Virus record (IMG/VR): IMGVR_UViG_3300021962_000021
Location: 174,220-238,219 of that record
Strand: one strand, 5' to 3'
DNA length: 64,000 bases
This document shows, piece by piece, positions 12,369 to 51,438 of the stretch (position 1 is its first letter; every line of letters begins with the position of its first letter). The notes under the pieces are model-generated. The model worked only from the letters and a program-made list of their open reading frames with translations, ran no database searches and was not told the origin of the DNA. The position numbers were made by a program, and so were the translations under genes.

Positions 12369-13025
12369 ATGAAAAAATTATTGAATTTTAAAAACATTGC
12401 TATCGCAGCATTGATTATTTACATTTTATTACAATGGTTTAACCCAGGTGGAGTTATGCCAGGTGGAAGAACTATCAGAATTGATGGTAAAAAATATGAA
12501 GTATTAAAGCACACAATCGACACGGTTGAAGTAGAAAAATTAAAAGTAGTTACTAAAAAAGGAAAAGATATTGTACATGAAGTAATTGATGTGGATACTT
12601 TAGTTTTAAAAGAATTGGTAAATGTAGATTCTGCAGCAATTCTTAAAGATTATTTATCAAAAGTAATTTATAAAGATACATTATTCCTTCCTGATTCATT
12701 AGGAACTGTTTCATTAGTTGATACTATTACTAAAAACAGAATATTAGGTAGAACATTTGACGCAAAAGTAAAACAAAGAGAAATAAAAGAAACTCTTATT
12801 GTTAAAGAACCGGCTAAACACCAACTTTATTATGGTTTAAATGGTGGATTCAACAAAGCAGATGTGGTATCTCATGTAGGAGCAGGTTTAATGTTAAAAA
12901 CCAAAAAAGATAAATTATATCAATTTGGTGTAGGTGTTACAAATAGAACAGTTGATGGAACAAATGGTTCATTATCACCGTTTATAAATTTTGGAACATA
13001 TTGGAAAATTAAATTGAAAAAATAA
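12369..13025 (+). CDS. Membrane-anchored or exported hypothetical protein
   Basis: N-terminal hydrophobic helix IAIAALIIYILLQWF; beta-strand-like C-terminus. Confidence 0.6.
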   Translation: MKKLLNFKNIAIAALIIYILLQWFNPGGVMPGGRTIRIDGKKYEVLKHTIDTVEVEKLKVVTKKGKDIVHEVIDVDTLVLKELVNVDSAAILKDYLSKVIYKDTLFLPDSLGTVSLVDTITKNRILGRTFDAKVKQREIKETLIVKEPAKHQLYYGLNGGFNKADVVSHVGAGLMLKTKKDKLYQFGVGVTNRTVDGTNGSLSPFINFGTYWKIKLKK

Positions 13026-14635
13026 TGAGTGTTCAAGGGCAACCAAAGAAAACACTTAAAGAGATAATTGCTGATGAATATCGTAGATGTGCGGGAGACC
13101 CCATCTACTTTATGAAAAAATATTGTATGATTCAGCACCCGGTGAGAGGTAAAATACCCTTTCACCTTTATCCTTTCCAGGAATCTTGTTTGACAGATTT
13201 TAAAGATAATCGTTTTAACATAATTCTTAAAAGTAGACAATTGGGTTTATCTACACTTTCTGCCGGTTATATTCTTTGGAAAATGATATTCAATCAGGAT
13301 TTTAACGCCTTAGTAATTGCAACCAAAGTGACCGTTGCAAAAAACTTAGTAGAGAAAGTAAGAGTTATGCATGACCTCCTTCCTGTTTGGTTGAGAGATG
13401 GTGGAACAGCGGCAGCTGAAGATAATAAACTTTCTCTTAAATTAAAAAATGGTTCACAAGTAAAAGCAATCGCATCTTCTCCAGATGCCGGACGTTCGGA
13501 AGCCTTATCACTACTTGTTGTGGATGAGGCAGCTTTCATTAGAGATATTGATGAAATTTGGTTATCAGCACAATCAACCTTATCAACGGGTGGTTCTGCT
13601 ATTGTATTATCTACACCAAATGGTGTTGGTAACTGGTTTCATAAAATGTGGGTTGAAGGTGAAAATGGAACGAATGGATTTAATACGATAAAACTTCATT
13701 GGACAGTTCACCCAGAAAGAAATCAGGCTTGGAGAGATGAACAAACTCGTATCTTAGGAGTTAAGGGTGCAGCACAAGAATGTGATTGTGACTTTATTGG
13801 TTCTGGTGATAATGTAATTGACCCACAATTATTGATGTGGTATAAAGACACTTATGTTATGGACCCTGTTGAAAAAAGAGGATTCGATGGAAACTTGTGG
13901 GTATGGGAACATCCAAACTACAATAGGCAATATATGGTAGTAGCCGACGTTGCCAGAGGTGATGGTTCGGATTATTCTACCGCACAAGTCATAGATATTG
14001 AAGATTCATCACAGGTTGCAGAGTATAGAGGTAAAATTGATACAAAAGATTTTGGAAACTTCTTAACAGCATTAGCAACGGAATATAACAATGCATTATT
14101 AGTAATAGAAAACTCAAATGTGGGATGGGCATGTATTCAGCAAGTAATTGACAGAGCATATCCTAATTTATTCTATATGAGTAATGATTTGAAATATGTG
14201 GATGTTGAAAAACAAATGTCTAATAAATATTATAGAGATGAAAGACAAATGGTTGCAGGATTTTCAACTACAACCAAAACAAGACCTCTTATCATATCAG
14301 CATTGGATACCTATATGAATGATAAAGATATTCTCATTCGTTCCCAAAGATTGATAGATGAATTATTTACTTTTATTTGGAATAATGGTAGAGCCGAAGC
14401 AATGAAGGGATATAATGATGACCTTACAATGGCATTGGCAATCGGATTATGGGTTAGAAATACTGCATTAAGATTAAGACAAGAAGGTATAGATTTAACA
14501 AAAGCAATGTTGGGTTCTTCACAAATAAATAAATATGAAAGTGTGTATACCGCGCATTCGCATTTAAAGAAAAATCCATACGAAATGGATATGGGTAGAG
14601 GAGAAAAGGAGAATCTTCATTGGTTATTAGGATAA
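13025..14635 (+). CDS. terL: Terminase large subunit (T4 gp17-like)
   Basis: LYPFQ adenine-binding motif, KSRQLG, LLVVDEAAF Walker B, STPNG coupling motif, RNase H-like DVARG..DYS and DDL. Confidence 0.95.
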   Translation: MSVQGQPKKTLKEIIADEYRRCAGDPIYFMKKYCMIQHPVRGKIPFHLYPFQESCLTDFKDNRFNIILKSRQLGLSTLSAGYILWKMIFNQDFNALVIATKVTVAKNLVEKVRVMHDLLPVWLRDGGTAAAEDNKLSLKLKNGSQVKAIASSPDAGRSEALSLLVVDEAAFIRDIDEIWLSAQSTLSTGGSAIVLSTPNGVGNWFHKMWVEGENGTNGFNTIKLHWTVHPERNQAWRDEQTRILGVKGAAQECDCDFIGSGDNVIDPQLLMWYKDTYVMDPVEKRGFDGNLWVWEHPNYNRQYMVVADVARGDGSDYSTAQVIDIEDSSQVAEYRGKIDTKDFGNFLTALATEYNNALLVIENSNVGWACIQQVIDRAYPNLFYMSNDLKYVDVEKQMSNKYYRDERQMVAGFSTTTKTRPLIISALDTYMNDKDILIRSQRLIDELFTFIWNNGRAEAMKGYNDDLTMALAIGLWVRNTALRLRQEGIDLTKAMLGSSQINKYESVYTAHSHLKKNPYEMDMGRGEKENLHWLLG

Positions 14636-15791: not shown

Positions 15792-17528
15792 ATGGCAGAT
15801 AAATCAATATTTGGTAGGTTACAAAAATTATTTTCAACAAATACCATAATTCGTAAAACACCTGATGGGGTGAAAGTTGTTGATACAGATGAGTATCAAT
15901 CAATGACCACTAACCTCGTTGACCGTTTTATGAAATTAAAGGTAAGTAATTATGCAGGTGGAGTAGAATCGGGATTAGCATATCAACAAGTTCGTATTGA
16001 CCTTTTTAGGGATTACGATTCAATGGATATGGACCCAATTATTTCATCAGCATTGAATGTATATGCGGATGAGTGCACTGCCAGAAATGAATTTGGAAAT
16101 GTTCTTAAAATTCATCACGAAGATGATAACATAAAGCAAATATTAGAAAATCTTTTTTATGATATTCTAAATATAGAACATACCTTATGGATGTGGACAA
16201 GAAATTTAGTTAAATATGGTGATTTCTATTTACAATTAGAAATGGCCGAAGGATTGGGTATTGTAAATGCACTTCCAATGTCTACTTACGAAATGAGTAG
16301 AATTGAAGGTTTCGATCCTGAAAATCCTCAAAGAGTTAAATTTGTATACGCCCCATACCAAAATCCATATAATGCGGTAGGACAAACTGCAAAGAAAGAA
16401 TACGAAAACTATGAAATAGCACACTTTAGATTAAATGGTGATGCAAACTTTTTACCTTACGGAAAATCTATGATTGAAGGTGGTAGAAGAGTTTGGAAAC
16501 AATTATCTTTAATGGAAGATGCTATGTTAATTCATAGAGTAATGAGAGCTCCTGAAAAAAGAATTTTTAAAGTTGATGTTGGTAATATTCCACCAAACGA
16601 AGTGGATAACTATATGCAAAAAATTATCAACGCATCTAAAAAAGTTCCATTTTTGGATGAAAGAACAGGAGAATATAACTTAAAATATAATATCCAAAAC
16701 TTAATCGAAGATTATTATATGCCAGTTCGTGGTAGTGATAATGGAACATCAATAGATACTTTGAAAGGGTTGGAATATAATATGACAGACGATATTAATT
16801 ATCTAAAAGGAAAATTATTAGCCGCATTACAAATTCCAAAGGCTTTCTTAGGATACGAAGAAGATACAAATGGTAAAGCAACTTTGGCCGGCATGGATGT
16901 TCGTTTTGCAAAAACAATTGAAAGAATACAAAGAGTTATTGTTTCGGAATTGACAAAGATTGCAATTGTTCACTTATATGCACAGGGTATAGATGATGAG
17001 AGATTGACAAACTTCAGTTTAGAATTAACCATTCCATCTAAAATATATGAACAAGAAAAAGTTGAGTTATACACTTCAAAAGTAGCATTAATTACTCAAA
17101 TGCAACAAACAAAAATGGTTTCTAAAAAGTGGATGTATGAAACTATTTTAGGAATGGCAAAAGATGAACAAGATGAACAAACTTTAGCTGTATTAGAAGA
17201 TACTAAACAGGCATTTCGTTTAACTTCAATTGAATCACAAGGTGTTGACCCTGCTAAAGAAACTGGTACTGATGGACCAACAAATGTAGAAGAAGAATTA
17301 AATAAATTAAAATCAGAATTAGAGGAAGATGGTGTTGGTAGACCAAAAGACCCTGTTAGATATGGACATGATGACCATCCAGAGGGAAGAGACCCGTTGG
17401 GAATAAAAACTTTAAAAACAAAAGAAGGCTCTGTAAAATACAAACCAAGAAATTCATATTTAGAGATATTTAAAGATATGAATGGTAATAAAAAGACTAT
17501 TTTGACAGAGAATTTGGATAAAAAGTAA
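15792..17528 (+). CDS. gp20: Portal protein (T4 gp20-like)
   Basis: LMEDAMLIHRVMRAPEKRIFKVDVGNIP, EDYYMPVRG, IDTLKG motifs. Confidence 0.95.
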   Translation: MADKSIFGRLQKLFSTNTIIRKTPDGVKVVDTDEYQSMTTNLVDRFMKLKVSNYAGGVESGLAYQQVRIDLFRDYDSMDMDPIISSALNVYADECTARNEFGNVLKIHHEDDNIKQILENLFYDILNIEHTLWMWTRNLVKYGDFYLQLEMAEGLGIVNALPMSTYEMSRIEGFDPENPQRVKFVYAPYQNPYNAVGQTAKKEYENYEIAHFRLNGDANFLPYGKSMIEGGRRVWKQLSLMEDAMLIHRVMRAPEKRIFKVDVGNIPPNEVDNYMQKIINASKKVPFLDERTGEYNLKYNIQNLIEDYYMPVRGSDNGTSIDTLKGLEYNMTDDINYLKGKLLAALQIPKAFLGYEEDTNGKATLAGMDVRFAKTIERIQRVIVSELTKIAIVHLYAQGIDDERLTNFSLELTIPSKIYEQEKVELYTSKVALITQMQQTKMVSKKWMYETILGMAKDEQDEQTLAVLEDTKQAFRLTSIESQGVDPAKETGTDGPTNVEEELNKLKSELEEDGVGRPKDPVRYGHDDHPEGRDPLGIKTLKTKEGSVKYKPRNSYLEIFKDMNGNKKTILTENLDKK

Positions 17529-18447: not shown

Positions 18448-18708
18448 ATGACAAATTATAGAATATATAAAGTAAGTAATTTTACTTCTTCTAGTGTTTG
18501 GACTAAATTGGGTAACGAAGCATCTGCAAGTTTGCCTGTAGCTACTGCTTGGGGTATTATGACTCCGGTTGGAATGGCAACATCGGGTAGTGTAACAGTT
18601 GAAGGTGGTGGAGATTTGGTTTTACAATCACTTATTCCTGGTCAAATATATCCATGTTACCCAACGGCTATTAGAGTATCTATGGGAACAGGTTCTGTAT
18701 TATCATAA
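18448..18708 (+). CDS. Small hypothetical protein, possibly virion-associated
   Basis: 86-aa ORF tightly packed in the operon; carries TSSS, SAS, SGS and TGS motifs. Confidence 0.6.
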   Translation: MTNYRIYKVSNFTSSSVWTKLGNEASASLPVATAWGIMTPVGMATSGSVTVEGGGDLVLQSLIPGQIYPCYPTAIRVSMGTGSVLS

Positions 18709-18726
18709 ATTTAAACGGAGAATAAA

Positions 18727-20034: not shown

Positions 20035-20625
20035 ATGAATAAGGGATTATTAATAGAAACACACTTATTTGAAGCAAAAATTGTTCAAGAAGAAAATGGA
20101 ACTTATTTAGTTCAAGGTATTCTTCAAAGAGCTGGTGCACCAAATCAAAACCACAGAAGATATCCAAAAGAAATCTTAATGAGAGAGTGTCAAAAATATG
20201 AACAACTCATTAAAGAAAGAAGAGCATTGGGTGAGTTAGACCATCCGGATTCTCCTGTAATCAACCTTAAAAATGTATCACATAACATCAGAGAAATTTG
20301 GTGGGATGGTGATGATGTGATGGGTAAAGTGGAAATTCTTTCAACTCCTTCTGGTAATATTTTAAGAGAATTATTAAAAAACAATATTCGTTTGGGTATA
20401 TCTTCAAGAGGTTTAGGTTCTGTTAAAGAATTGAAAGATGGAACTGTAATGGTTCAGGAAGACTTTGAATTAGTTGGTTGGGATTTTGTTTCTAACCCAT
20501 CTACACATGGAGCATTTATGGCACCAATCAATGAATCCAAACAATGGAAACAAATGGCAGAAGAATGTGGTAAGTGGTGTAAAGCACAAGATTTAATGAG
20601 AGAAATTATAATTGAATTAAATTAA
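20035..20625 (+). CDS. gp21: Prohead core protease (T4 gp21-like)
   Basis: NHRRYP, ALGELDHP, VSHNI, GISSRGLGS, DFVSNPS motifs. Confidence 0.95.
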   Translation: MNKGLLIETHLFEAKIVQEENGTYLVQGILQRAGAPNQNHRRYPKEILMRECQKYEQLIKERRALGELDHPDSPVINLKNVSHNIREIWWDGDDVMGKVEILSTPSGNILRELLKNNIRLGISSRGLGSVKELKDGTVMVQEDFELVGWDFVSNPSTHGAFMAPINESKQWKQMAEECGKWCKAQDLMREIIIELN

Positions 20626-20880: not shown

Positions 20881-21315
20881 ATGATAAAGTTAAAAAATAT
20901 ATTAAGAGAAACAGAAGAGTTTCAACAACTTCCATCTGAAATAAAAAAACATTTTTTAGAAATTATTTCTACATTTGGACAGCATAGAGAATCTATGACT
21001 AGAAAATCAGATATCAGACAAGTTGCAGAAACATTGGGTGGTATTGCAGATGCTGCACAAGAATATACTTTGAGAGAAGGTGGTGATTGGTTTGATAGAG
21101 TGACTATTAAGAGAAATATGAACGAACTTAAAAAGTTACAAACTGCATTTGAAAAAGAAGCAGTAGAAGCAAAATCACAAGAACAAAGATTAGAAGCTCT
21201 TTACGAAGATATGGGTCATGTATTGGGTAGATATTTTGAAATTGCAGAAATCACCGAAGAACAAATGAAACAAAGATTAGGATTACAAGAAACTAAAAAA
21301 TCTAAAAAGAAATAA
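20881..21315 (+). CDS. Hypothetical coiled-coil head-region protein
   Basis: N-terminus MIKLKNILRE; DWFD.VTIKRNM...LYEDMGHVLGRYFEI. Confidence 0.65.
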   Translation: MIKLKNILRETEEFQQLPSEIKKHFLEIISTFGQHRESMTRKSDIRQVAETLGGIADAAQEYTLREGGDWFDRVTIKRNMNELKKLQTAFEKEAVEAKSQEQRLEALYEDMGHVLGRYFEIAEITEEQMKQRLGLQETKKSKKK

Positions 21316-21686
21316 TGGAACAATTAGCATCTTTATTATTACATAGTAGAACACAGGCACACGTATTTCATGTAGGACAGAGTGGTGTGGGTTCTGATGC
21401 AAGACATAGAGCATTGGGTGATTATTATGATGCAATTGGTGGAATCGTTGATGGTTTGGTTGAAGTATATCAAGGACAATATGGTTTGATTAAATTACAA
21501 CCTGTTAGTGGTTTGGATACAAATAGTGAAATGAAAAATGTAATTGCATATTTTGTTAAATTAATTGCAGCGGTAGAAAAGTTGAGAAAAGATGATAAAT
21601 TACAAATGAGTTGGTTACAAAATGATATTGATACGGTTGTATCGTTATTATATAAAACAAAATATAGATTAGAAAATCTACAATAA
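21315..21686 (+). CDS. Ferritin/Dps-like four-helix protein (DUF5856-like)
   Basis: QAHVFH...HRALGDYYD...DGLVEVYQGQYG...LQNDID...YRL. Confidence 0.7.
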   Translation: MEQLASLLLHSRTQAHVFHVGQSGVGSDARHRALGDYYDAIGGIVDGLVEVYQGQYGLIKLQPVSGLDTNSEMKNVIAYFVKLIAAVEKLRKDDKLQMSWLQNDIDTVVSLLYKTKYRLENLQ

Positions 21687-21689
21687 GTT

Positions 21690-21869
21690 ATGTTGATTGT
21701 AAGTGTAAAAGGTGGTAACATAGAAGGTGCATTAAAAGAATATAAAAAGAAAGTTCAATCCGTAAAACAAATTGAACAATTAAGAGAAAGAAAAAATTAC
21801 ACCAAACCATCTGTAAAAAATAGGTTACAAAAAGAAGAAGCTAAAAGGAAAAATAAATTATTTTTTTAA
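21690..21869 (+). CDS. rpsU: Ribosomal protein bS21 (phage-encoded), 59 aa, not in ORF track
   Basis: MLIVSVKGGNIEGALKEYKKKVQSVKQIEQLRERKNYTKPSVKNRLQKEEAKRKNKLFF: NI..ALK.YK.K, LR.R and KPS motifs; MLI start as in Bacteroidota bS21. Confidence 0.9.
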   Translation: MLIVSVKGGNIEGALKEYKKKVQSVKQIEQLRERKNYTKPSVKNRLQKEEAKRKNKLFF

Positions 21870-21891
21870 TTTTCTTTAGTTTTCTATAAAA

Positions 21892-21899
21892 TATTTATA
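21892..21899 (+). promoter_or_regulatory. Putative late promoter motif TATTTATA
   Basis: Exact motif about 160 nt upstream of the scaffold gene. Confidence 0.6.
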
Positions 21900-22058
21900 T
21901 ATATTATCAAATATCCCATTATTATATGGGATTTATTATTACGACATAGTTGGTTAATGAATACCCTTCTCTTATAAGGTGTGACCGAACAACCAACATT
22001 ATTCTATTGGAGTTTCCTTTCGAAATAACTTCACGAACAAATTTAAGGAGAAAAACAA

Positions 22059-23288
22059 ATGGCAAATTCAAAATTATTGAAAGAAGCAATTGCTGATGCT
22101 AAGGCTGTTAAAGAAACTGCTCTTGCAAACGCAAAACTCGCTCTTGAAGAAGCATTTACTCCAAGACTTCAATCTATCTTATCTCAAAAGTTAAGAGCAG
22201 AAGCTGAAGCAGAAGAGAAAGATGCAGAAAAAGTAGACGAGGAATTGGATTCTACAGGCATTGGTTCTTCTACCTCTAATCCTAAATTAGACGCGCATAC
22301 TGAATTCGAAGCGGGTTCTACTAAAACAACATCAGGTGAGCCAGGTGCTCAAGTTGATGATTACAAAAAAGTAGCAGATATCAACGAAGAAGAAGGTATG
22401 GAAATGGGTGATGATGAAGCTGAAAAGCAAAATGAAATCGCTCAATTAAAAGCTAGATTAGCAGAATTAGAAGCAGGTGATGACCAAATGGCTGATGAAG
22501 AACCAAAAATGGAAGCTGATGATGAAATGGGTTCAGATGATGAATTCAATTTTGATTCAGAAGAAGGTGATGGTGAAGAATACGATGTTACCGGTAACGA
22601 AGAAGAAGATACCGAAGATGACATGGATTTAGAAGCTATCATCAGAGAATTAGAAGCACAATTAGGTGAAGAAGAAGATTCAGAAGAAGAAATGCCTGCA
22701 GATGATTCAGCAATGGCTGAAAATTTAGCAGACGGTTCAGAAGCTGGAACTGACAAAGGTGAAGACCCTAAAGTGGTTGTAACTAACGAAGAAGAAGAAA
22801 AAGAAGATGAAAAAGATGAAAAGAATGAAGTAATCGACTTAGAAGAAATTCTTCGTGAAATGGAAGCTGATATGAAAGGTGATGAAGATGAGAAAAAAGA
22901 CGAATCTTTAAAATCTGAATTAAACGAAGCTTACAAGACTATCAAATCTTTACAAAAAACTATTAACGAAGTAAACTTATTAAACGCTAAGTTATTATTC
23001 GCTAATAAATTATTCAGAGCACACAACATGACTAACGAACAAAAAGTTAAAGTGATTGAAACTTTGGATAGAACAAAATCAGTTAGAGAAGTTAAATTGG
23101 TTTACTCTACATTAGTAGAAAACTTCAAATATTCTTCAACTAACAAAGTTGCTAAAAAAGCAATCTCAGAAGGAATCGCTTCTAAAGCAGTTAAATCAAC
23201 TGCACCAAAAGCAGCAGCTAAGCAAGTAATTGCAGAATCTGCAGATTTCGCTGATAGATTTAAAAAATTAGCAGGAATTATTAAGTAA
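22059..23288 (+). CDS. Prohead scaffolding protein (gp22-like)
   Basis: Very acidic coiled-coil protein directly before the major capsid gene; C-terminal RFKKLAGI; strong AAGGAG SD. Confidence 0.85.
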   Translation: MANSKLLKEAIADAKAVKETALANAKLALEEAFTPRLQSILSQKLRAEAEAEEKDAEKVDEELDSTGIGSSTSNPKLDAHTEFEAGSTKTTSGEPGAQVDDYKKVADINEEEGMEMGDDEAEKQNEIAQLKARLAELEAGDDQMADEEPKMEADDEMGSDDEFNFDSEEGDGEEYDVTGNEEEDTEDDMDLEAIIRELEAQLGEEEDSEEEMPADDSAMAENLADGSEAGTDKGEDPKVVVTNEEEEKEDEKDEKNEVIDLEEILREMEADMKGDEDEKKDESLKSELNEAYKTIKSLQKTINEVNLLNAKLLFANKLFRAHNMTNEQKVKVIETLDRTKSVREVKLVYSTLVENFKYSSTNKVAKKAISEGIASKAVKSTAPKAAAKQVIAESADFADRFKKLAGIIK

Positions 23289-23318: not shown

Positions 23319-24935
23319 ATGGATTTAAAACAAATTATGTCAGGCAAAAACCCACAAAACGTAATGCTTGAGCAAACTAGAGGTTTGAAAGCAAAGTGGG
23401 AAAAAACCGGCTTATTAGAAGGAGTAGGTTCTGAAACTTCTAAGCACGGTATGGCTGTAATGCTTGAAAACCAAGCAAAGCAATTACTTGATGAAGCTAC
23501 TAGAACTGGTACTTCAGCAGGTTCAGAAGAGTGGGCAGGTGTAGCTCTTCCATTGGTAAGAAGAATCTTCGGTAGCATCGCTGCAAAAGAATTCGTTTCT
23601 GTTCAACCAATGAACTTACCTTCAGGTCTTATTTTCTATATGGATTTCAAATACGGTACAGCTACATCGGTAGGTAGACCAGCTTCTGGTTCTTCTATGT
23701 TCGGTAACGGTGGTACATTCGGTAAAGATTCTTTATCTCCAGCAGGTAACAAATTGGGTTCTACTCAAACTACTGAAGGCGGTCTTTACGGAGCAGGTAG
23801 ATTTGGATATACAATCAACGATGTAACTTCTGACGCTTTAACAGCAACAGTAACTACAGCTTCTTGGGCTGATGTTAATTTCGATGCTGATTACTCAGCT
23901 TCAGCAGCTGCAGGTGTTATCAGAAAAGTAAAAATTGGTTTACCATCTGATGCTGATTTCAACGCAGTAAGAGCTTTCTCTTTAACTGGTTCAGTTGACC
24001 AATTACCACAATTTACTTCAATTGATTCTTTAGGTTCTGCATCTTTCTTCGTATCAGCTTCTGTAGCAACAGTAGTACATGGTGCAGGTGGATACGGTAA
24101 TCCAAAAGTAAACTATTCTAAGCAACCAACTGATATCACAAGAGGTGATTTCGAAGATAGAGGTTCTGATTTAGCGATTCCTGAAATCGAATTAGAATTG
24201 AAGTCTGAACCAATCGTTGCTAAGACTAGAAAGTTAAAAGCAATCTGGACTCCAGAATTGGCACAAGACTTAAACGCTTACCATTCAGTAGATGCTGAAG
24301 CTGAATTAACTCAAATGTTATCTGAGTATATTTCTTTGGAAATCGACTTAGAAATCTTAGAGATGTTACAGCAAAACGCATTCACAACTGATTATTGGTC
24401 AGCAAGAGTTGGATACGATTACAATGCAGCAGCAGGTGCATTCCAAATCGACTCTAACGCAGCAGCAGCTTCTGCTTACACAAAGAGCACTTGGTATCAA
24501 ACTTTAGGTATTAAATTACAAAAAGTTTCTAACAAGATTCACCAATTAACTATGAGAGGTGGTGCAAACTTCTTAGTTGTATCTCCAAACGTAGCTACAA
24601 TTTTAGAATCTATGAACGGATTCTCTGCAAACCCAGGTAAAGATGCTTTACAATTTGCAGCAGGTGTTACTAATATCGGTTCAATCTCTAACAGATATGA
24701 TGTTTACAAAAACCCATACATGACTGAGAATGTAATCTTATTAGGTTTCAAAGGTTCTAACTTCTTCGAAACAGGTGCTGTATACGCTCCATATGTTCCG
24801 TTGATTATGACTCCATTGGTTTATGACCCAACTAACTTCACTCCAAGAAGAGGTGTTATGACTAGATACGCTAAGAAAATCGTAAGACCAGAGTTCTACG
24901 GTAAGATTGTCGTTGATGGTTTAAACACTTTATAA
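23319..24935 (+). CDS. gp23: Major capsid protein (T4 gp23-like)
   Basis: MLENQ, SVQPMNLPSGLIF, AKTRKLKA.WT.ELAQDL.A.H..DAEAEL, YAPYVPL, GVMTRY. Confidence 0.97.
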   Translation: MDLKQIMSGKNPQNVMLEQTRGLKAKWEKTGLLEGVGSETSKHGMAVMLENQAKQLLDEATRTGTSAGSEEWAGVALPLVRRIFGSIAAKEFVSVQPMNLPSGLIFYMDFKYGTATSVGRPASGSSMFGNGGTFGKDSLSPAGNKLGSTQTTEGGLYGAGRFGYTINDVTSDALTATVTTASWADVNFDADYSASAAAGVIRKVKIGLPSDADFNAVRAFSLTGSVDQLPQFTSIDSLGSASFFVSASVATVVHGAGGYGNPKVNYSKQPTDITRGDFEDRGSDLAIPEIELELKSEPIVAKTRKLKAIWTPELAQDLNAYHSVDAEAELTQMLSEYISLEIDLEILEMLQQNAFTTDYWSARVGYDYNAAAGAFQIDSNAAAASAYTKSTWYQTLGIKLQKVSNKIHQLTMRGGANFLVVSPNVATILESMNGFSANPGKDALQFAAGVTNIGSISNRYDVYKNPYMTENVILLGFKGSNFFETGAVYAPYVPLIMTPLVYDPTNFTPRRGVMTRYAKKIVRPEFYGKIVVDGLNTL

Positions 24936-24976
24936 TCTTTGAGTAGATTAGATAAGTAATAAACTTAACATAAAAG

Positions 24977-25010
24977 AAAAAGGGGAAGTAGAAATACTTT
25001 CCCTTTTTTT
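24977..25010 (+). terminator. Rho-independent terminator after the major capsid gene
   Basis: Stem AAGGGGAAGTA, GAAA loop, TACTTTCCCTT, then a T-tract. Confidence 0.85.
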
Positions 25011-30001: not shown

Positions 30002-30038
30002 GATTGAATAACTATACTTAAACGGAGAATAAGAAAAT

Positions 30039-47751: not shown

Positions 47752-50700
47752 ATGGCATCAGCAGAAGAAAAAAAACTACAAGCATTACAGAAGTCCAGAC
47801 AGTTAATGTTGGATAATTTATCTTTAATGAAGCAGACACAAGCTGCTCATAAAGCTGAATATGATGCTGCTGTCGAATATACAAAACAATGGGAATCATA
47901 TTACTCTATAATGAGTGATAATGAAAAGAAAGCATTTGATGCTAGAAAGAAAATGATAGCGGATTATGATAAAGCCGCAAAAGGTATTCAATCAGTAAAT
48001 AAAGGACTTGAAGAAAACGCAAAACAATCCAAAAGAGCAACTCAAGAAGTTCAAAAACAAAAGAAAGCAATTGAGGAATTAAGAAAAGAAACCAAAGCAA
48101 TGGTTAGTGACCAATCTCAGTTAGTTAAGGGATTGGAAAAAATGAACGACGCTTTTAAGGGTACTAGTAAAACGCAGCGTGTAATAAATACCGGATTTGC
48201 TCAACTTGAAGTTTCATTATCAAATGTAAATAAAGCAATTGGTGATGGAAAAAAATTACATCAAGATGAATTAAAAGAAATTCAAAAATACAAACAAGCT
48301 TATAATGATTATTCTACATCAATAGCAGATGTGCAAAGACAAGTTGCAGAAAAAAACATATCAGAAGAACAAGCTATTGAATTGATAAAAAAGCAAAGAG
48401 AAGCATTCAATGATGTATCTAAGGGATTAAAATTAACAACTGAAGAAGGTAAAAAAGTTGCAGCAGAAATTCAGGGAATGGTTTCACATGCCGATGAATT
48501 TGGAAAAAAATTAGAAGGGGTAAATAAAAAGGCTGCAAACATAAAATCAGGTTTTGAAGAAATAAAAGGACAAATTGGAGGAATGCTACCAATGGGTAAG
48601 GAACTATTGGATGTATTTAGTAAATTTGGTAAAGTTGGATTTGCAGGAGCACTTGCAGCATTAGGCGCAGCAGCTGGTAAATTTTTAAACGAAAGTGGTT
48701 TACTTAAAAAAGCATTACCTGGTATTAAAGACCGTTTGGATATTGAACAAGAGGGTAAGAGAGCAACATTTAATGAAGTTACTCAACCTTTACAAAGACT
48801 AGAATTTCAAACTGATGAAAAGTTTAAGAAAAAGTCATTTGCATTAGACCAACAATATGAAGCCAAAAGACATGGCATAACAATGGCTAATAAACAAAAA
48901 GAGTCAGCAATGACCTTTAAGAGTGAGGCTAGTATGGCATATTTTGGTAAAGCACTTCCTAATCTTGGATTTGCAGCAAATGAATTACAAAATGCAGGAA
49001 TTAGTGCGGATAATATTGCAGGAGCATCGGTGACCATTGCATCTCAAATGGGTGTGGGTGGAAAACAATCAGCAATATTGGGTGCTGAAATGGCAACATT
49101 TGCTAAATTTGCAGGAATAGGTGCAGAAGAAGCAACCGGTATATCCGAATCATTCAAATTAATGGATGGTGTGACTGCAGATACGGCAGCAAATATGATG
49201 CAAGGTGTTAAGGCAATGGCAGAACAATTAGACCTTAACCCAGGAGCAGTAATGAAAGAAATGGCTAATGCAAGTGAAATTGCATTAGAAATGAATATAA
49301 ATAGTGGAAAGGCATTAGCAAAGCAGGTATCATACGCATCTTCATTGGGCGTATCGTTCTCAAAGATAGCTAAAGCAGGACAAAGTATGGTATTGAACTA
49401 TAAGGATAGTATCAAAAAAGAAATGCAACTATCCGCTTTATTGGGTAAGCAAGTTGACCTTTCCGAAGTAAGAGCTAAATTTGCAGAAGGTGATACAACC
49501 GGTGCAATGCAGGCATTACAAGCACAAGGTTTAGACCCGGCTCAAATGGATATGTTCCAAAAGCAAGCATTGCAAGAGGCAACGGGTATGGATTTAGGTG
49601 AACTAACAAAGATTGGTAAAGGAGGTGGAAAATCAGCCGAAGCTTTGGATTCTGCTGCAAATAAAATAGATAAAGCAAGTATACATGCTGCAAATAAACA
49701 CCTTTTAGCAGCAGAAACTGCAAGACAGATATCTTTGGAAAATCAACAATTTGCATTACAACAGGCGGCAGCAGCAGCAAATTTCCAATTGCAATTAGAA
49801 CAAGATAAAGAACAATTTGAATTAGACCAGCAAAAAGCAAAGGAACAATTTGAAAACGATTTATCATTCGATAGAAAAAGACAAGAAATCGAATTACAAC
49901 AAGAGTTAGCCACTTTAGGAAATACTATACTTACACAACTTATCCCTGCATTATTAGCATTTGGTGCCGGTGGTGGATTTAGTGCATTGGGAGATTTGGT
50001 TGATATGATACCAGGCAAAAAAGGTAAAAAAGGTGGAAGAAGTAGGAGTAGAACAAATACAAATAAACAAAGTTCGGCTCAAAGAAGAAACACTGCAATG
50101 CAATCAAGACCGGCGCCTGCAACAGGTGGACCTGCATCAGCAACACCTGCGGCACCACCAACAAGAGCACAACAAGTTGCACAGATGAAGGCTCAGAATC
50201 CTGGTATGACATCGCAGCAAGCATTACAACAAGTTAAAGCTGCACCCGCAGGTGGTGCACCAAGCGGACCTGCGGCAGCTGCACCAAAACCAACCGGTGG
50301 AGGTGGAGGAGGGGCAGTTCCAAAACCAGCTGCAGCACCTGCGCCAAAATTAGCAGCACCTGCGGCACCATCTGTTCCACCTGCACCAAAAATCCCTGCA
50401 GCCGCACCTATTTCAACTCCTAAAATGAGTTTTTGGGATAAATTAAATCCTAAAAAATTCTTAGGTAATGTTATAGGTAAATCTGGTGGTGTATTAAAAG
50501 TATTGGGTTCGGTGGCCGGAAAAGTAGCAGGACCATTAGGAACTGCATTGGCAGGATTTAGTATGTATAAAGACCTTTCAGCATTGGTAACAATGAATGA
50601 AGGACCTTTGCCAGATTTATATAAAAATGTGGGTGGTAGTGTTATGGGATTGGTTGGTTCAATATTGGGTGGTGCACTTGGCGGAACATTTTTAGGACCT

Positions 50701-51438
50701 ATTGGAGCAATGTTAGGTAGTACACTTGGTTCGACCGTTTTTGGTTGGTTGGGTGATTTATTTCCGGGAGTTCCAACATTTTTAGGAGAATTTTTAGTTG
50801 ATACTTTGGGGTTATTTGGTAAACCGGGTTCAGCAGTTCCACAAACTACAGCCGGTGGCGGTGGCGGAGCTGCATCTGCACCATCAGCAGCAGGAACAAC
50901 ATCAAAAGCAACGGCAATTGTGGGAACTAGTCAAGCAGTTAAAGCAGCTGCAGCACCAACCGCAGCACCTGCAGGCGGTGGTACACCTGCATCTACACCG
51001 GCGCCAGCTGGCGGCGGAGCAAAAGTAGCTAGTCCTGGAGCAACAGGTACATCAACAAAGGGTTCTGCATTAGCAGGGGGAATGACCGGTATGTTAATGG
51101 GTGTTCAACTTCAAAAAATATTCGGACCAACAAATACTAAGACAGAAGGATTTATAGACCAAGCAAAAGTTGATTCTGCAAAACAAACTGCAGCAATTAT
51201 GCTACAGACGAAAACTATTACAAATTCTAAAGGATTACCAACGCAAAATACGGCAATGCAAGAACAACTCAATGATTTGATAAAAATAATGGCTACAGCA
51301 TATGGTAATCAAAGTGGAGAAGTAACAATTATGTTAGATGGTAGAAAAGTATCTAGAACGATAAATAAAGTAAATTCGAACAATAATCTAACGGGTGGTG
51401 ATAAGGGTGATAATGGTGGTAAAGGTGGTCCTGTATAA
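47752..51438 (+). CDS. Tape measure protein
   Basis: Long Ala/Gln/Lys helical protein after tube and chaperone; Gly-rich hydrophobic segments; C-terminal IMLDGRKV. Confidence 0.85.
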   Translation: MASAEEKKLQALQKSRQLMLDNLSLMKQTQAAHKAEYDAAVEYTKQWESYYSIMSDNEKKAFDARKKMIADYDKAAKGIQSVNKGLEENAKQSKRATQEVQKQKKAIEELRKETKAMVSDQSQLVKGLEKMNDAFKGTSKTQRVINTGFAQLEVSLSNVNKAIGDGKKLHQDELKEIQKYKQAYNDYSTSIADVQRQVAEKNISEEQAIELIKKQREAFNDVSKGLKLTTEEGKKVAAEIQGMVSHADEFGKKLEGVNKKAANIKSGFEEIKGQIGGMLPMGKELLDVFSKFGKVGFAGALAALGAAAGKFLNESGLLKKALPGIKDRLDIEQEGKRATFNEVTQPLQRLEFQTDEKFKKKSFALDQQYEAKRHGITMANKQKESAMTFKSEASMAYFGKALPNLGFAANELQNAGISADNIAGASVTIASQMGVGGKQSAILGAEMATFAKFAGIGAEEATGISESFKLMDGVTADTAANMMQGVKAMAEQLDLNPGAVMKEMANASEIALEMNINSGKALAKQVSYASSLGVSFSKIAKAGQSMVLNYKDSIKKEMQLSALLGKQVDLSEVRAKFAEGDTTGAMQALQAQGLDPAQMDMFQKQALQEATGMDLGELTKIGKGGGKSAEALDSAANKIDKASIHAANKHLLAAETARQISLENQQFALQQAAAAANFQLQLEQDKEQFELDQQKAKEQFENDLSFDRKRQEIELQQELATLGNTILTQLIPALLAFGAGGGFSALGDLVDMIPGKKGKKGGRSRSRTNTNKQSSAQRRNTAMQSRPAPATGGPASATPAAPPTRAQQVAQMKAQNPGMTSQQALQQVKAAPAGGAPSGPAAAAPKPTGGGGGGAVPKPAAAPAPKLAAPAAPSVPPAPKIPAAAPISTPKMSFWDKLNPKKFLGNVIGKSGGVLKVLGSVAGKVAGPLGTALAGFSMYKDLSALVTMNEGPLPDLYKNVGGSVMGLVGSILGGALGGTFLGPIGAMLGSTLGSTVFGWLGDLFPGVPTFLGEFLVDTLGLFGKPGSAVPQTTAGGGGGAASAPSAAGTTSKATAIVGTSQAVKAAAAPTAAPAGGGTPASTPAPAGGGAKVASPGATGTSTKGSALAGGMTGMLMGVQLQKIFGPTNTKTEGFIDQAKVDSAKQTAAIMLQTKTITNSKGLPTQNTAMQEQLNDLIKIMATAYGNQSGEVTIMLDGRKVSRTINKVNSNNNLTGGDKGDNGGKGGPV

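What the first reader, a model, noticed from the sequence alone, without database searches (positions are those of the whole stretch)
21690..21869. Hidden phage bS21 that may unmask the anti-Shine-Dalgarno of host ribosomes
Seen: a 59-aa bS21 between the protease and scaffold genes. Known: bS21 occurs among the head genes of large freshwater phages, and in Flavobacterium johnsoniae bS21 (Tyr54) with bS18 and bS6 sequesters the anti-SD. Aligning from memory on KPS, the phage has Arg at the Tyr54 position and a shorter, divergent tail (KEEAKRKNKLFF). The next gene has the strongest SD in the window. Inference: a late translational switch in which phage bS21 enables SD-dependent initiation and possibly SD-stimulated frameshifting.
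Basis: partly seen in the sequence, partly recalled or inferred. Interest (0 to 1): 0.85.

Follow-up and report, generated by a model that had tools for sequence, protein, structure and literature searches.

The report
Phage bS21 without the Tyr54 clamp
An uncultured T4-like freshwater phage carries a real ribosomal-protein bS21 gene from a large phage family that has lost the tyrosine Bacteroidota use to hide the ribosome's Shine-Dalgarno-reading tail, but comparing about 140 related phage loci does not support a general switch to Shine-Dalgarno-dependent translation.

Summary
ORF 21690-21869 (+) is a true bS21 (Pfam 50 bits against a cut-off of 27). It is the last gene of the head operon of a T4-like phage (32% GC, SD-less genes; IMG/VR contig of 238 kb). 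It belongs to a family of more than 200 clusters at 90% identity. Residues 1-51 resemble Bacteroidota bS21. The tail does not: the F. johnsoniae Tyr54 column holds Arg in 119 of 120 members, against Tyr in 79 of 80 Bacteroidota genomes. Ile55 is replaced by Lys, and the tail is shorter, more basic and Firmicutes-like. The next gene (scaffold) has the strongest start-proximal SD in the window, and it is the only conserved one among 16 head-gene orthologue sets.

All other late genes lack an SD. Close relatives keep the SD-like element without bS21 at that site, or carry Arg-type bS21 without it, and a tree test shows no co-variation. No evidence for frameshifting was found.

The SD-like element sits in a conserved leader of about 150 nt that follows a late-promoter-like motif. 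Three of its helices are supported by covariation, and it matches no Rfam family. This is a new variant of a known kind. ASD unmasking remains plausible but untested.

The parts
21690..21869 (+). Phage bS21 gene (59 aa). The N-terminal 51 residues are Bacteroidota-like. The tail is short and basic, with R53/K54 in place of Y54/I55 and F58-F59 at the end.
   Evidence: The AF2 model has helices 11-24, 27-34 and 40-58 at pLDDT 79.
21315..21686 (+). DUF5856 gene. Its stop lies 3 nt before the bS21 ATG (TAAGTTATG), and the bS21 start has no SD, so bS21 is probably translationally coupled to it.
   Evidence: The coupling is inferred.
20035..20625 (+). Prohead protease (Peptidase_S77, T4 gp21-like), in the same operon.
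21872..21886 (+). Invariant T-rich element TTCTTTAGTTTTCTA just after the bS21 stop. In bS21-less relatives it follows a terminator hairpin. Its first 7 nt can pair with the SD-like element, but that pairing is not established.
21891..21899 (+). Late-promoter-like motif ATATTTATA. It lies 168 nt before the scaffold ATG, whereas at other genes the same motif lies 12-56 nt upstream.
   Evidence: 14 of 17 + strand copies lie in the 4.7% of the window that is intergenic. Promoter function is inferred.
21913..21932 (+). Hairpin H1, probably at the 5' end of the scaffold-MCP late mRNA. The scan also called it terminator-like.
   Evidence: three pairs show compensatory changes (CCCA/TGGG, CTCA/TGAG, CTTA/TAAG, TCCA/TGGA).
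21949..21997 (+). Leader helix H2: outer stem GTTGGTT/AACCAAC, inner hairpin ACCCTT/AAGGTGT, and the invariant motif GTGACCGAACAA.
   Evidence: five pairs have changes on both sides. The same architecture appears in the distant L166.
22008..22033 (+). Leader hairpin H3 (TGGAGTT/AACTTCA). It is invariant within the family. G-U changes to A-U in L229/L266, and the stem is replaced by TTGGAC/GTCCAA in L166.
22044..22050 (+). SD-like element TAAGGAG, 8 nt before the scaffold ATG. TAAGGA is invariant and the last base is G or A in relatives.
22059..23288 (+). Putative scaffold protein (acidic, gp22-like by position). It is the only head gene with a conserved SD-like element.
   Evidence: The function is inferred from position and composition; no Pfam or PHROG hit.
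23319..24935 (+). Major capsid protein (Gp23 family) with an SD-less, A-rich start region. It is followed by a strong terminator at 24975-25010.

Best explanation
The ORF is a phage-encoded bS21, made late as the last gene of the head-protease operon of a T4-like phage whose host is most likely a Bacteroidota (Flavobacteriia-like) bacterium. Its start has no SD and abuts the stop of the upstream gene, so its synthesis would escape the SD-based autoregulation of host rpsU.

Inferred: the Bacteroidota-like body (residues 1-51) docks it on the host 30S platform in place of host bS21. The tail lacks Tyr54 and Ile55, is shorter and more basic, and looks like the tails of SD-using Firmicutes. Ribosomes carrying it would therefore hold the 16S 3' tail less tightly, as the Y54A and deltaC mutants do, and gain some ability to read SD sequences.

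In this lineage the one plausible beneficiary is the scaffold-MCP late mRNA. Its long structured leader ends in a conserved UAAGGAG placed 8 nt before the AUG. This benefit would be accessory, not obligatory, because relatives separate the two features.

Shown: the identity of the protein, the residue replacement, family-wide conservation, the SD-less gene set, and the conserved SD-like element and leader structure. Inferred: incorporation into ribosomes, ASD release, and use of the SD.
For: bS21 identity. A large conserved family with R53-K54-N55 invariant. Arg at the Y54 column in 119/120 members against Tyr in 79/80 Bacteroidota and in 40/64 of the nearest representatives. Homology to Bacteroidota bS21 mostly stops at residues 45-52 (a few matches reach 56-58), while Firmicutes bS21 align to the end of the tail. 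Tail charge +5.2 against +2.4. Y54A and deltaC raise SD reporters 3-5 fold: PMC9976891. Tyr54 and Ile55 contact the 3' tail: PMC7797042. Short Firmicutes bS21 permits extended SD-aSD pairing: PMC13009471. Phage genes are SD-less and internal SD-like motifs are not avoided, which fits an SD-blind host. The scaffold SD-like element is the only conserved one. It is absent from the bS21-less Flavobacterium phage immuto. Pelagibacter phage bS21 enters E. coli ribosomes, as cited in PMC9976891.
Against: The SD-like element persists in at least 4 lineages with no bS21 at the syntenic site, and it is absent from at least 5 Arg-type bS21 lineages. There is no co-variation on the tree. Only one gene has an SD. 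Half of the relatives have the weaker TAAGGAA. Arg can stack on adenine, and an aromatic residue is conserved 4-5 residues later on the same predicted helix. The host is unknown. No expression or incorporation data exist. The closest cultured MCP relative (Mel-JY01) is reported from Microcystis.
Confidence: 0.35

Rival explanations
1. The phage bS21 replaces or tops up host bS21 without changing the state of the anti-SD. Arg53, by cation-pi stacking on A1534, or the conserved terminal Phe/Tyr does the job of Tyr54. The gain to the phage is ribosome supply or preference for phage mRNAs through differences in the N-terminal helices, as Chen et al. 2022 proposed.
For: Chen et al. argue this for their clades. 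R53 is invariant, as expected for an RNA contact. An aromatic residue occupies the last 1-3 residues in nearly all members and lies on the same predicted helix, 40-58. The late genes are SD-less, so freeing the ASD has no obvious target. bS21 and the SD-like element do not co-vary.
Against: Both reported tail-contacting residues are changed (Y54 to R, I55 to K). The tail is a derived state that is shorter, more basic and converges on the tails of SD-using bacteria. The nearest relatives keep Tyr, so the change looks like a functional shift rather than drift.
Confidence: 0.3
2. The SD-like UAAGGAG does not depend on the phage bS21. It is part of a cis-regulatory leader of the scaffold-MCP mRNA. 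It could be a standby or landing site, a partner for alternative pairing with pyrimidine tracts in the leader, or, on read-through transcripts, a partner of UUCUUUA just after the bS21 stop. In that last case a ribosome terminating on bS21 would open the scaffold start site.
For: The leader is conserved above synonymous-site level (0.83-0.92 against 0.69-0.77). Helices H1 and H2 (outer stem and inner hairpin) show compensatory changes: 8 pairs, 0 of 500 shuffles reach this, and the slid controls are low. The leader and the SD-like element occur in relatives without bS21. The variable G/A faces a U (U-A or U-G). L206 changes C to U and G to A together, and L264 and L267 lose both elements.
Against: Helix 1 is otherwise invariant, so it is unproven. 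Four lineages keep the 5' element without the SD-like element. The late-promoter-like motif lies between the two strands, so the main transcript probably lacks the 5' strand. The leader exists without any SD in L166 and others.
Confidence: 0.4
3. The protein works off the ribosome, for example as an RNA-binding regulator of the adjacent leader or as a decoy that disturbs host rpsU autoregulation.
For: bS21 is a small basic RNA-binding protein next to a structured leader. Extraribosomal roles of ribosomal proteins are known: bS21 is reported in the OLE ribonucleoprotein complex (title of PMC12054373).
Against: The leader is kept unchanged in relatives without bS21. Conservation covers the whole bS21 fold, including the ribosome-docking N-terminal part.
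Confidence: 0.07

Closest known systems
Bacteroidia bS21 (F. johnsoniae RpsU, PDB 7JIL chain z)
   Same: It is the best solved-structure match (33 bits). Residues 1-51 align to 1-52, with the MLI..K.G.NI..ALK.YK.K and KPSV motifs and the same three-helix layout.
   Different: Y54 becomes R53 and I55 becomes K54. The tail is about 5 residues shorter and more basic. The gene has no extended SD, so it is not under the rpsU-type autoregulation.
Phage bS21 of freshwater Bacteroidetes jumbo phages (Chen et al. 2022, PMC9723584)
   Same: bS21 sits among the terminase, portal, protease and MCP genes of low-GC (31-34%) freshwater myophages, is inferred to be expressed late, and has Bacteroidota-like sequence.
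   Different: Their gene is on the opposite strand, and all 61 proteins keep an aromatic residue at position 54. Here the gene is on the same strand as the head genes and the family has Arg. The contig is 238 kb, against 293-331 kb for theirs.
Short bS21 of Firmicutes (L. lactis 5MYJ, S. aureus 5ND8, B. subtilis 7QV1)
   Same: The length is 57-58 aa, and the basic tail K.EA.RK.K aligns to within 1-2 residues of the chain end. These hosts use SD sequences, and the short tail is said to permit extended SD-aSD pairing (PMC13009471).
   Different: The N-terminal part is closer to the Bacteroidota type. Overall scores are lower (27-30 bits against 33).
RpsU of Microcystis phage Mel-JY01 (PP395634)
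   Same: It is a cultured T4-like relative (MCP 55% identical) with bS21 at the same place, after the protease and before the scaffold and MCP.
   Different: The protein is 75 aa with an N-terminal extension and a different basic tail. Many genes of that phage carry GGAG-type SDs. It did not reach E 1e-3 in tblastn with the window protein.
Pelagibacter phage HTVC008M bS21 (Mizuno et al. 2019)
   Same: It is a T4-like phage bS21, shown to enter E. coli ribosomes (as cited in PMC9976891).
   Different: The host phylum differs. No link to ASD sequestration was made. I did not compare it here.
Francisella bS21 paralogues (PMC9578407)
   Same: It is a precedent that swapping bS21 homologues changes which mRNAs are translated (abstract).
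   Different: These are cellular paralogues, not viral genes. I did not read the mechanism here.

Membership tests
Ribosomal protein bS21 (Pfam PF01165 / TIGR00030) | Profile score above the curated cut-off | tested here: met
   Pfam 50 bits against 27. TIGR00030 41.5 bits against 28.95.
Ribosomal protein bS21 (Pfam PF01165 / TIGR00030) | Small (about 55-70 aa) basic protein with three helices and the ALK/R..K and KPS motifs | tested here: met
   59 aa, motifs present. AF2 helices 11-24, 27-34, 40-58. The Foldseek hits are all bS21 chains, but all have E above 0.1.
Ribosomal protein bS21 (Pfam PF01165 / TIGR00030) | Binds the 30S platform next to the 16S 3' end | not testable with these tools
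   This needs ribosome purification with mass spectrometry, or cryo-EM.
ASD-sequestering bS21 of Bacteroidia (Jha et al. 2021) | Signature Tyr54 that stacks on A1534 | tested here: not met
   Arg in 119/120 family members. Tyr in 79/80 Bacteroidota genomes.
ASD-sequestering bS21 of Bacteroidia (Jha et al. 2021) | Ile55 contact and a C-terminal part that is less basic than in other phyla | tested here: not met
   Lys54 replaces Ile55. Tail net charge is +5.2 against +2.4.
ASD-sequestering bS21 of Bacteroidia (Jha et al. 2021) | Strong or extended SD on its own gene (Flavobacteriales autoregulation) | tested here: not met
   The phage bS21 start scores -0.3 kcal/mol. Many Flavobacteriaceae rpsU starts score -16 to -17.
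bS21 phage clades a-e of Chen et al. 2022 | bS21 on the reverse strand within the head-gene block | tested here: not met
   The gene is on the same strand as all the head genes. The paper's arrangement is described.
bS21 phage clades a-e of Chen et al. 2022 | Aromatic residue at position 54 | tested here: not met
   for this family, for theirs.
bS21 phage clades a-e of Chen et al. 2022 | TerL at least about 70% similar to theirs | not tested
T4-like (Straboviridae-like) myophage head module | Gp20 portal, Gp21-type protease and Gp23 MCP in order | tested here: met
   Portal_T4 231 bits, Peptidase_S77 112 bits, Gp23 258 bits. TerL lies at 13025-14635.
Any Rfam RNA family (for the scaffold leader) | Covariance-model match | tested here: not met
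   There is no hit in 21870-22058 at E up to 1. blastn finds no match in GenBank phages.

The most novel reading that the evidence does not exclude
A widespread family of phage bS21 proteins (more than 200 clusters at 90% identity) converts the SD-blind ribosomes of Bacteroidota into SD-reading ribosomes late in infection. It would do so by replacing the Tyr54/Ile55 clamp with a short basic Firmicutes-like tail. The scaffold-MCP mRNA, with its structured leader and lone SD, would be a dedicated client. That would be a virus rewiring the host's mode of start-site selection.
Probability: 0.2. Interest if true: 0.85.

Novelty: new variant of a known kind. Interest (0 to 1): 0.5.

Why it matters
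Phage bS21 is the commonest virus-encoded ribosomal protein, and its function is unknown. In Bacteroidota, bS21 is one of three proteins that hide the anti-SD, and point mutants show that touching Tyr54 is enough to change which mRNAs are read. Every published Bacteroidota-phage bS21 kept an aromatic residue at that position. This family does not, so it offers a natural, abundant and strongly conserved variant. It can be dropped into the existing F. johnsoniae reporter and cryo-EM systems to ask whether phages use bS21 to change the ribosome's initiation mode. The comparative data here also narrow the hypothesis: if ASD release occurs, it is not needed for, and did not co-evolve with, the one SD-like element in the head module. 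Separately, the conserved structured leader of the scaffold-MCP mRNA is an undescribed viral cis-element in phages likely to infect SD-blind hosts.

Tried and rejected
1. Chance ORF: rejected by profile scores and codon-position conservation.
2. Placing F58/F59 under Tyr54: MAFFT and HMMER both put Arg there with no gap in the tail. The aromatic residue lies 4-5 residues later.
3. Structural superposition on 7JIL: the Foldseek hits were all bS21 chains but all had E above 0.1 and rmsd of 7-10 A, so they say nothing about residue equivalence.
4. Host from bacterial genomes: the first genome scan, with family-specific patterns, found nothing. The second scan used a pattern biased towards Bacteroidota, so it shows similarity but is not an unbiased host call.
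5. H1 as a plain intrinsic terminator: most relatives lack the T-run after it.
6. T-rich element as a repeated promoter: it is not repeated in the window.
7. Long-range helix between UUCUUUA and UAAGGAG: it is consistent but unproven, and it is contradicted by relatives that keep only the 5' element and by the position of the promoter-like motif.
8. Co-evolution of bS21 with the SD-like element: tested on a tree and not found. The tree rests on only 458 columns and many branches are weak.
9. SD-stimulated frameshifting: internal SD-like motifs are common, and none lies at an obvious overlapping-ORF junction other than normal ATG/stop overlaps. I did not pursue this further.
10. Known RNA family or leader in cultured phages: none found.
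11. A covariance model of the leader was not built, because of the time cost. I compared the distant L166 leader by folding instead.

Full report
**What is there.** The window is the structural module of a T4-like myophage. All 57 credible genes lie on the + strand at 32% GC. They include TerL (13025-14635), a Gp20 portal (15792-17528), a Gp21-type prohead protease (20035-20625) and a Gp23 capsid protein (23319-24935). The window matches IMG/VR contig UViG_3300021962_000021 (238 kb). The nearest cultured relatives by MCP are Microcystis phage Mel-JY01 (55%), Flavobacterium phage immuto (51%) and Rhodothermus phage RM378 (40%).

ORF 21690-21869 encodes 59 aa and is a bona fide bS21. It scores 50 bits on Pfam PF01165 (cut-off 27), 41.5 bits on TIGR00030 (cut-off 28.95), and also matches PHROG 21469. 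Its ATG lies 3 nt after the stop of a DUF5856 gene, and it has no SD. Three small genes separate it from the protease.

**A large, constrained family.** The word-indexed search returned 208 clusters (at 90% identity) of 58-62 aa proteins. The 120 listed are 73-100% identical to the query, and some sit on contigs of up to 239 kb. IMG/VR holds at least 161 loci. Among relatives, codon positions 1 and 2 are 0.905/0.906 identical and position 3 is 0.686. R53, K54 and N55 are invariant in a 23-member alignment.

**The Tyr54 question.** The best solved-structure match is F. johnsoniae bS21 (7JIL chain z). The alignment covers residues 1-51 of the phage protein and then stops. The F. johnsoniae tail reads ...KPSVVKRAQIQKAAY54I55QTLKD. 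The phage tail reads ...KPSVKNRLQKEEAKR53K54NKLFF.

- In a MAFFT alignment of 120 family members with the 64 nearest 50%-identity representatives, the Tyr54 column holds Arg in 119 of 120 family members and Lys in the other one. It holds Tyr in 40 of the 64 neighbours.
- In 80 Bacteroidota genomic rpsU genes it holds Tyr 79 times and His once. tblastn homology to the phage protein mostly ends at residues 45-52, and a few matches reach 56-58.
- The phage tail is shorter and more basic, with net charge +5.2 against +2.4.
- The phage tail aligns to within 1-2 residues of the chain end with the short tails of L. lactis, S. aureus and B. subtilis bS21.

It is also sharper than stated, because both residues reported to touch the 16S tail (Tyr54 and Ile55; PMC7797042) are replaced.

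Two cautions apply. First, nearly every member has Phe or Tyr within its last three residues. These lie 4-5 positions after R53 on a predicted continuous helix, 40-58. Second, Arg side chains commonly stack on bases (general knowledge). Chen et al. 2022 reported that all 61 of their Bacteroidetes-phage bS21 keep an aromatic residue at position 54 and that the gene lies on the opposite strand. This family differs on both counts.

**SD usage.** I used duplex energies against the 16S tail ACCUCCUUA. The 57 gene starts average -1.4 kcal/mol against -1.9 for random positions, so the phage is SD-less. Internal SD-like motifs are frequent: AAGGAG occurs 18 times on the + strand, and AAAGGAGGTG occurs inside a gene at 49619. 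This fits a host that ignores SDs.

The scaffold gene is the exception. TAAGGAG at 22044-22050 lies 8 nt before the ATG and scores -9.2, the strongest of all starts. One such start is not significant on its own, since 0.25 are expected by chance.

Across 16 orthologous head genes in up to 78 related loci, the picture is clear. Every scaffold start scores at or below -6, and half score at or below -9. No other gene has a conserved SD, apart from 17% of one set. TAAGGA is invariant amid variable flanks, and the seventh base is G or A in roughly equal numbers. Flavobacterium phage immuto has no bS21 and no SD at its scaffold gene. Mel-JY01 has a 75-aa RpsU at the syntenic place and GGAG-type SDs on many genes.

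**The spacer is a structured leader.** The 189 nt between bS21 and the scaffold gene are 0.81-0.93 identical between relatives. That exceeds third codon positions of the flanking genes, which are 0.69-0.77.

RNAalifold and a pair count on 52 sequences give 99.9% paired cells. Eight pairs have changes on both sides, against 3.5 in shuffles (0 of 500 shuffles reach 8), and the slid controls are low.

- Hairpin H1 (21913-21932) and the two stems of H2 (21949-21997) are supported by covariation.
- H3 (22008-22033) is invariant within the family. It shows G-U changing to A-U in two lineages.
- H3 is replaced by a different stem in the same place in the distant locus L166.

No Rfam family matches the leader, and neither does any GenBank phage.

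The motif ATATTTATA occurs 17 times on the + strand. Fourteen of these lie in the 4.7% of the window that is intergenic, 12-56 nt before gene starts. This makes it a likely late promoter, analogous to T4's TATAAATA (my inference). Before the scaffold gene it lies 168 nt upstream. The scaffold-MCP mRNA therefore has a uniquely long leader that probably begins at H1, and it ends at the strong terminator at 24975-25010.

RNAalifold also pairs UUCUUUA, just after the bS21 stop, with UAAGGA(G/A). That helix is invariant and unproven. One relative changes both sides together, and two lose both elements. However, four relatives keep only the 5' element, and the promoter-like motif lies between the two strands.

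**Natural experiments.** I searched IMG/VR for the invariant loop motif and found relatives with every combination of features.

- **No bS21 at the syntenic site, SD-like element present.** A terminator hairpin takes the place of bS21: L205, L231, L234, L251, L245.
- **No bS21, no SD-like element:** L206, L229, L253/L262/L275, L264, L267/L278.
- **Arg-type bS21 with other tails and no SD:** L170 type, L173/L230 type, L212, L226, and the more distant L166.
- **Tyr-type bS21 without SD:** L222.

On a tree of 137 loci (458 columns, many weak branches), bS21 presence changes at least 8 times and the SD-like element at least 6 times. Independent-pair tests show no co-variation. One caveat remains: bS21 could lie elsewhere in those genomes, because I saw only fragments.

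**Mechanism.** I commit, at modest confidence (0.35), to the following. The phage makes bS21 late and free of the host's SD-based rpsU feedback. The protein docks through its Bacteroidota-like body. Its Tyr54/Ile55-less, Firmicutes-like tail loosens the grip on the 16S 3' end, as the Y54A and deltaC mutants do (3-5 fold on SD reporters; PMC9976891). Short Firmicutes bS21 is said to permit extended SD-aSD helices (PMC13009471).

The scaffold-MCP mRNA may profit in this lineage, but the comparative data show that this link is neither necessary nor co-evolved. The main rival (0.3) is substitution without any change in the ASD, with Arg53 or the terminal aromatic residue doing the job of Tyr54. 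Separately, the SD-like element may act as part of the leader irrespective of bS21 (0.4). I found no support for frameshifting.

**Novelty.** Phage bS21 in head modules of freshwater Bacteroidota phages is known (PMC9723584; Mizuno et al. 2019). This is a new variant: same-strand orientation, an Arg54-type short basic tail, and a position next to an undescribed structured leader carrying the only SD-like element. The papers I could search hold no test of phage bS21 in Flavobacterium.

Noticed in passing
window 21905-22058: The leader of the scaffold-MCP genes is a conserved structured RNA of about 150 nt (H1, H2 with the invariant loop GTGACCGAACAA, H3). H1 and H2 are supported by covariation. 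It has no Rfam match and no match in GenBank phages. It also occurs in relatives that lack bS21.
   Followed up: yes
window, e.g. 14640, 17546, 21891, 25936, 29993, 36654, 43443, 51463, 58086: The motif ATATTTATA is strongly concentrated in intergenic DNA: 14 of 17 + strand copies lie in 4.7% of the window, usually 12-56 nt before a start codon. It is probably this phage's late promoter.
   Followed up: partly
L205, L231, L245, L253 and others (IMG/VR relatives): Close relatives have a GC-containing terminator hairpin (e.g. AAACCTCAAAGAAATTTGAGGTTTTT) exactly where bS21 sits here. The bS21 gene therefore behaves as a cassette that was gained or lost at least 8 times on the local tree.
   Followed up: partly
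window 18705-18726 and 30012-30038: The string TTAAACGGAGAATAA occurs before two gene starts (18727 and 30039). The GGAG is kept in only 17% of relatives at the first gene. Its meaning is unknown.
   Followed up: partly
window 24975-25010: A strong intrinsic-terminator-like hairpin (16 pairs plus a T-run) lies right after the major capsid gene and closes the scaffold-MCP unit.
   Followed up: no
L016, L021, L024, L040, L043: In some relatives an ATG inside H1 opens a reading frame that runs through the whole leader, in frame, into the scaffold gene (444-463 aa). In the window a TAG interrupts it. This is probably accidental, but I did not test it.
   Followed up: no
window 49619-49628: A perfect extended SD-like string, AAAGGAGGTG, lies inside the 1228-aa gene 47752-51438. 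Such strings are not avoided in this phage, which fits an SD-blind host.
   Followed up: no
L082 (Microcystis phage Mel-JY01, PP395634): This cultured relative, reported on a cyanobacterium, has a 75-aa RpsU at the syntenic position and GGAG-type SDs before many genes, including the scaffold and MCP. It is a useful contrast for experiments.
   Followed up: partly
L048, and L194/L218/L219/L236: A few relatives have altered bS21 3' ends. In L048 the frame runs on into the leader. Others have two adjacent stop codons after ...KNKLF. These could be assembly errors or real variants.
   Followed up: no
L086-L165 (Bacteroidota rpsU loci): The published pattern is reproduced. Many Flavobacteriaceae rpsU genes carry an extended SD (GAAAGGAGGTG, about -16 to -17 kcal/mol), while Prevotella and Bacteroidaceae rpsU genes do not.
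   Followed up: partly
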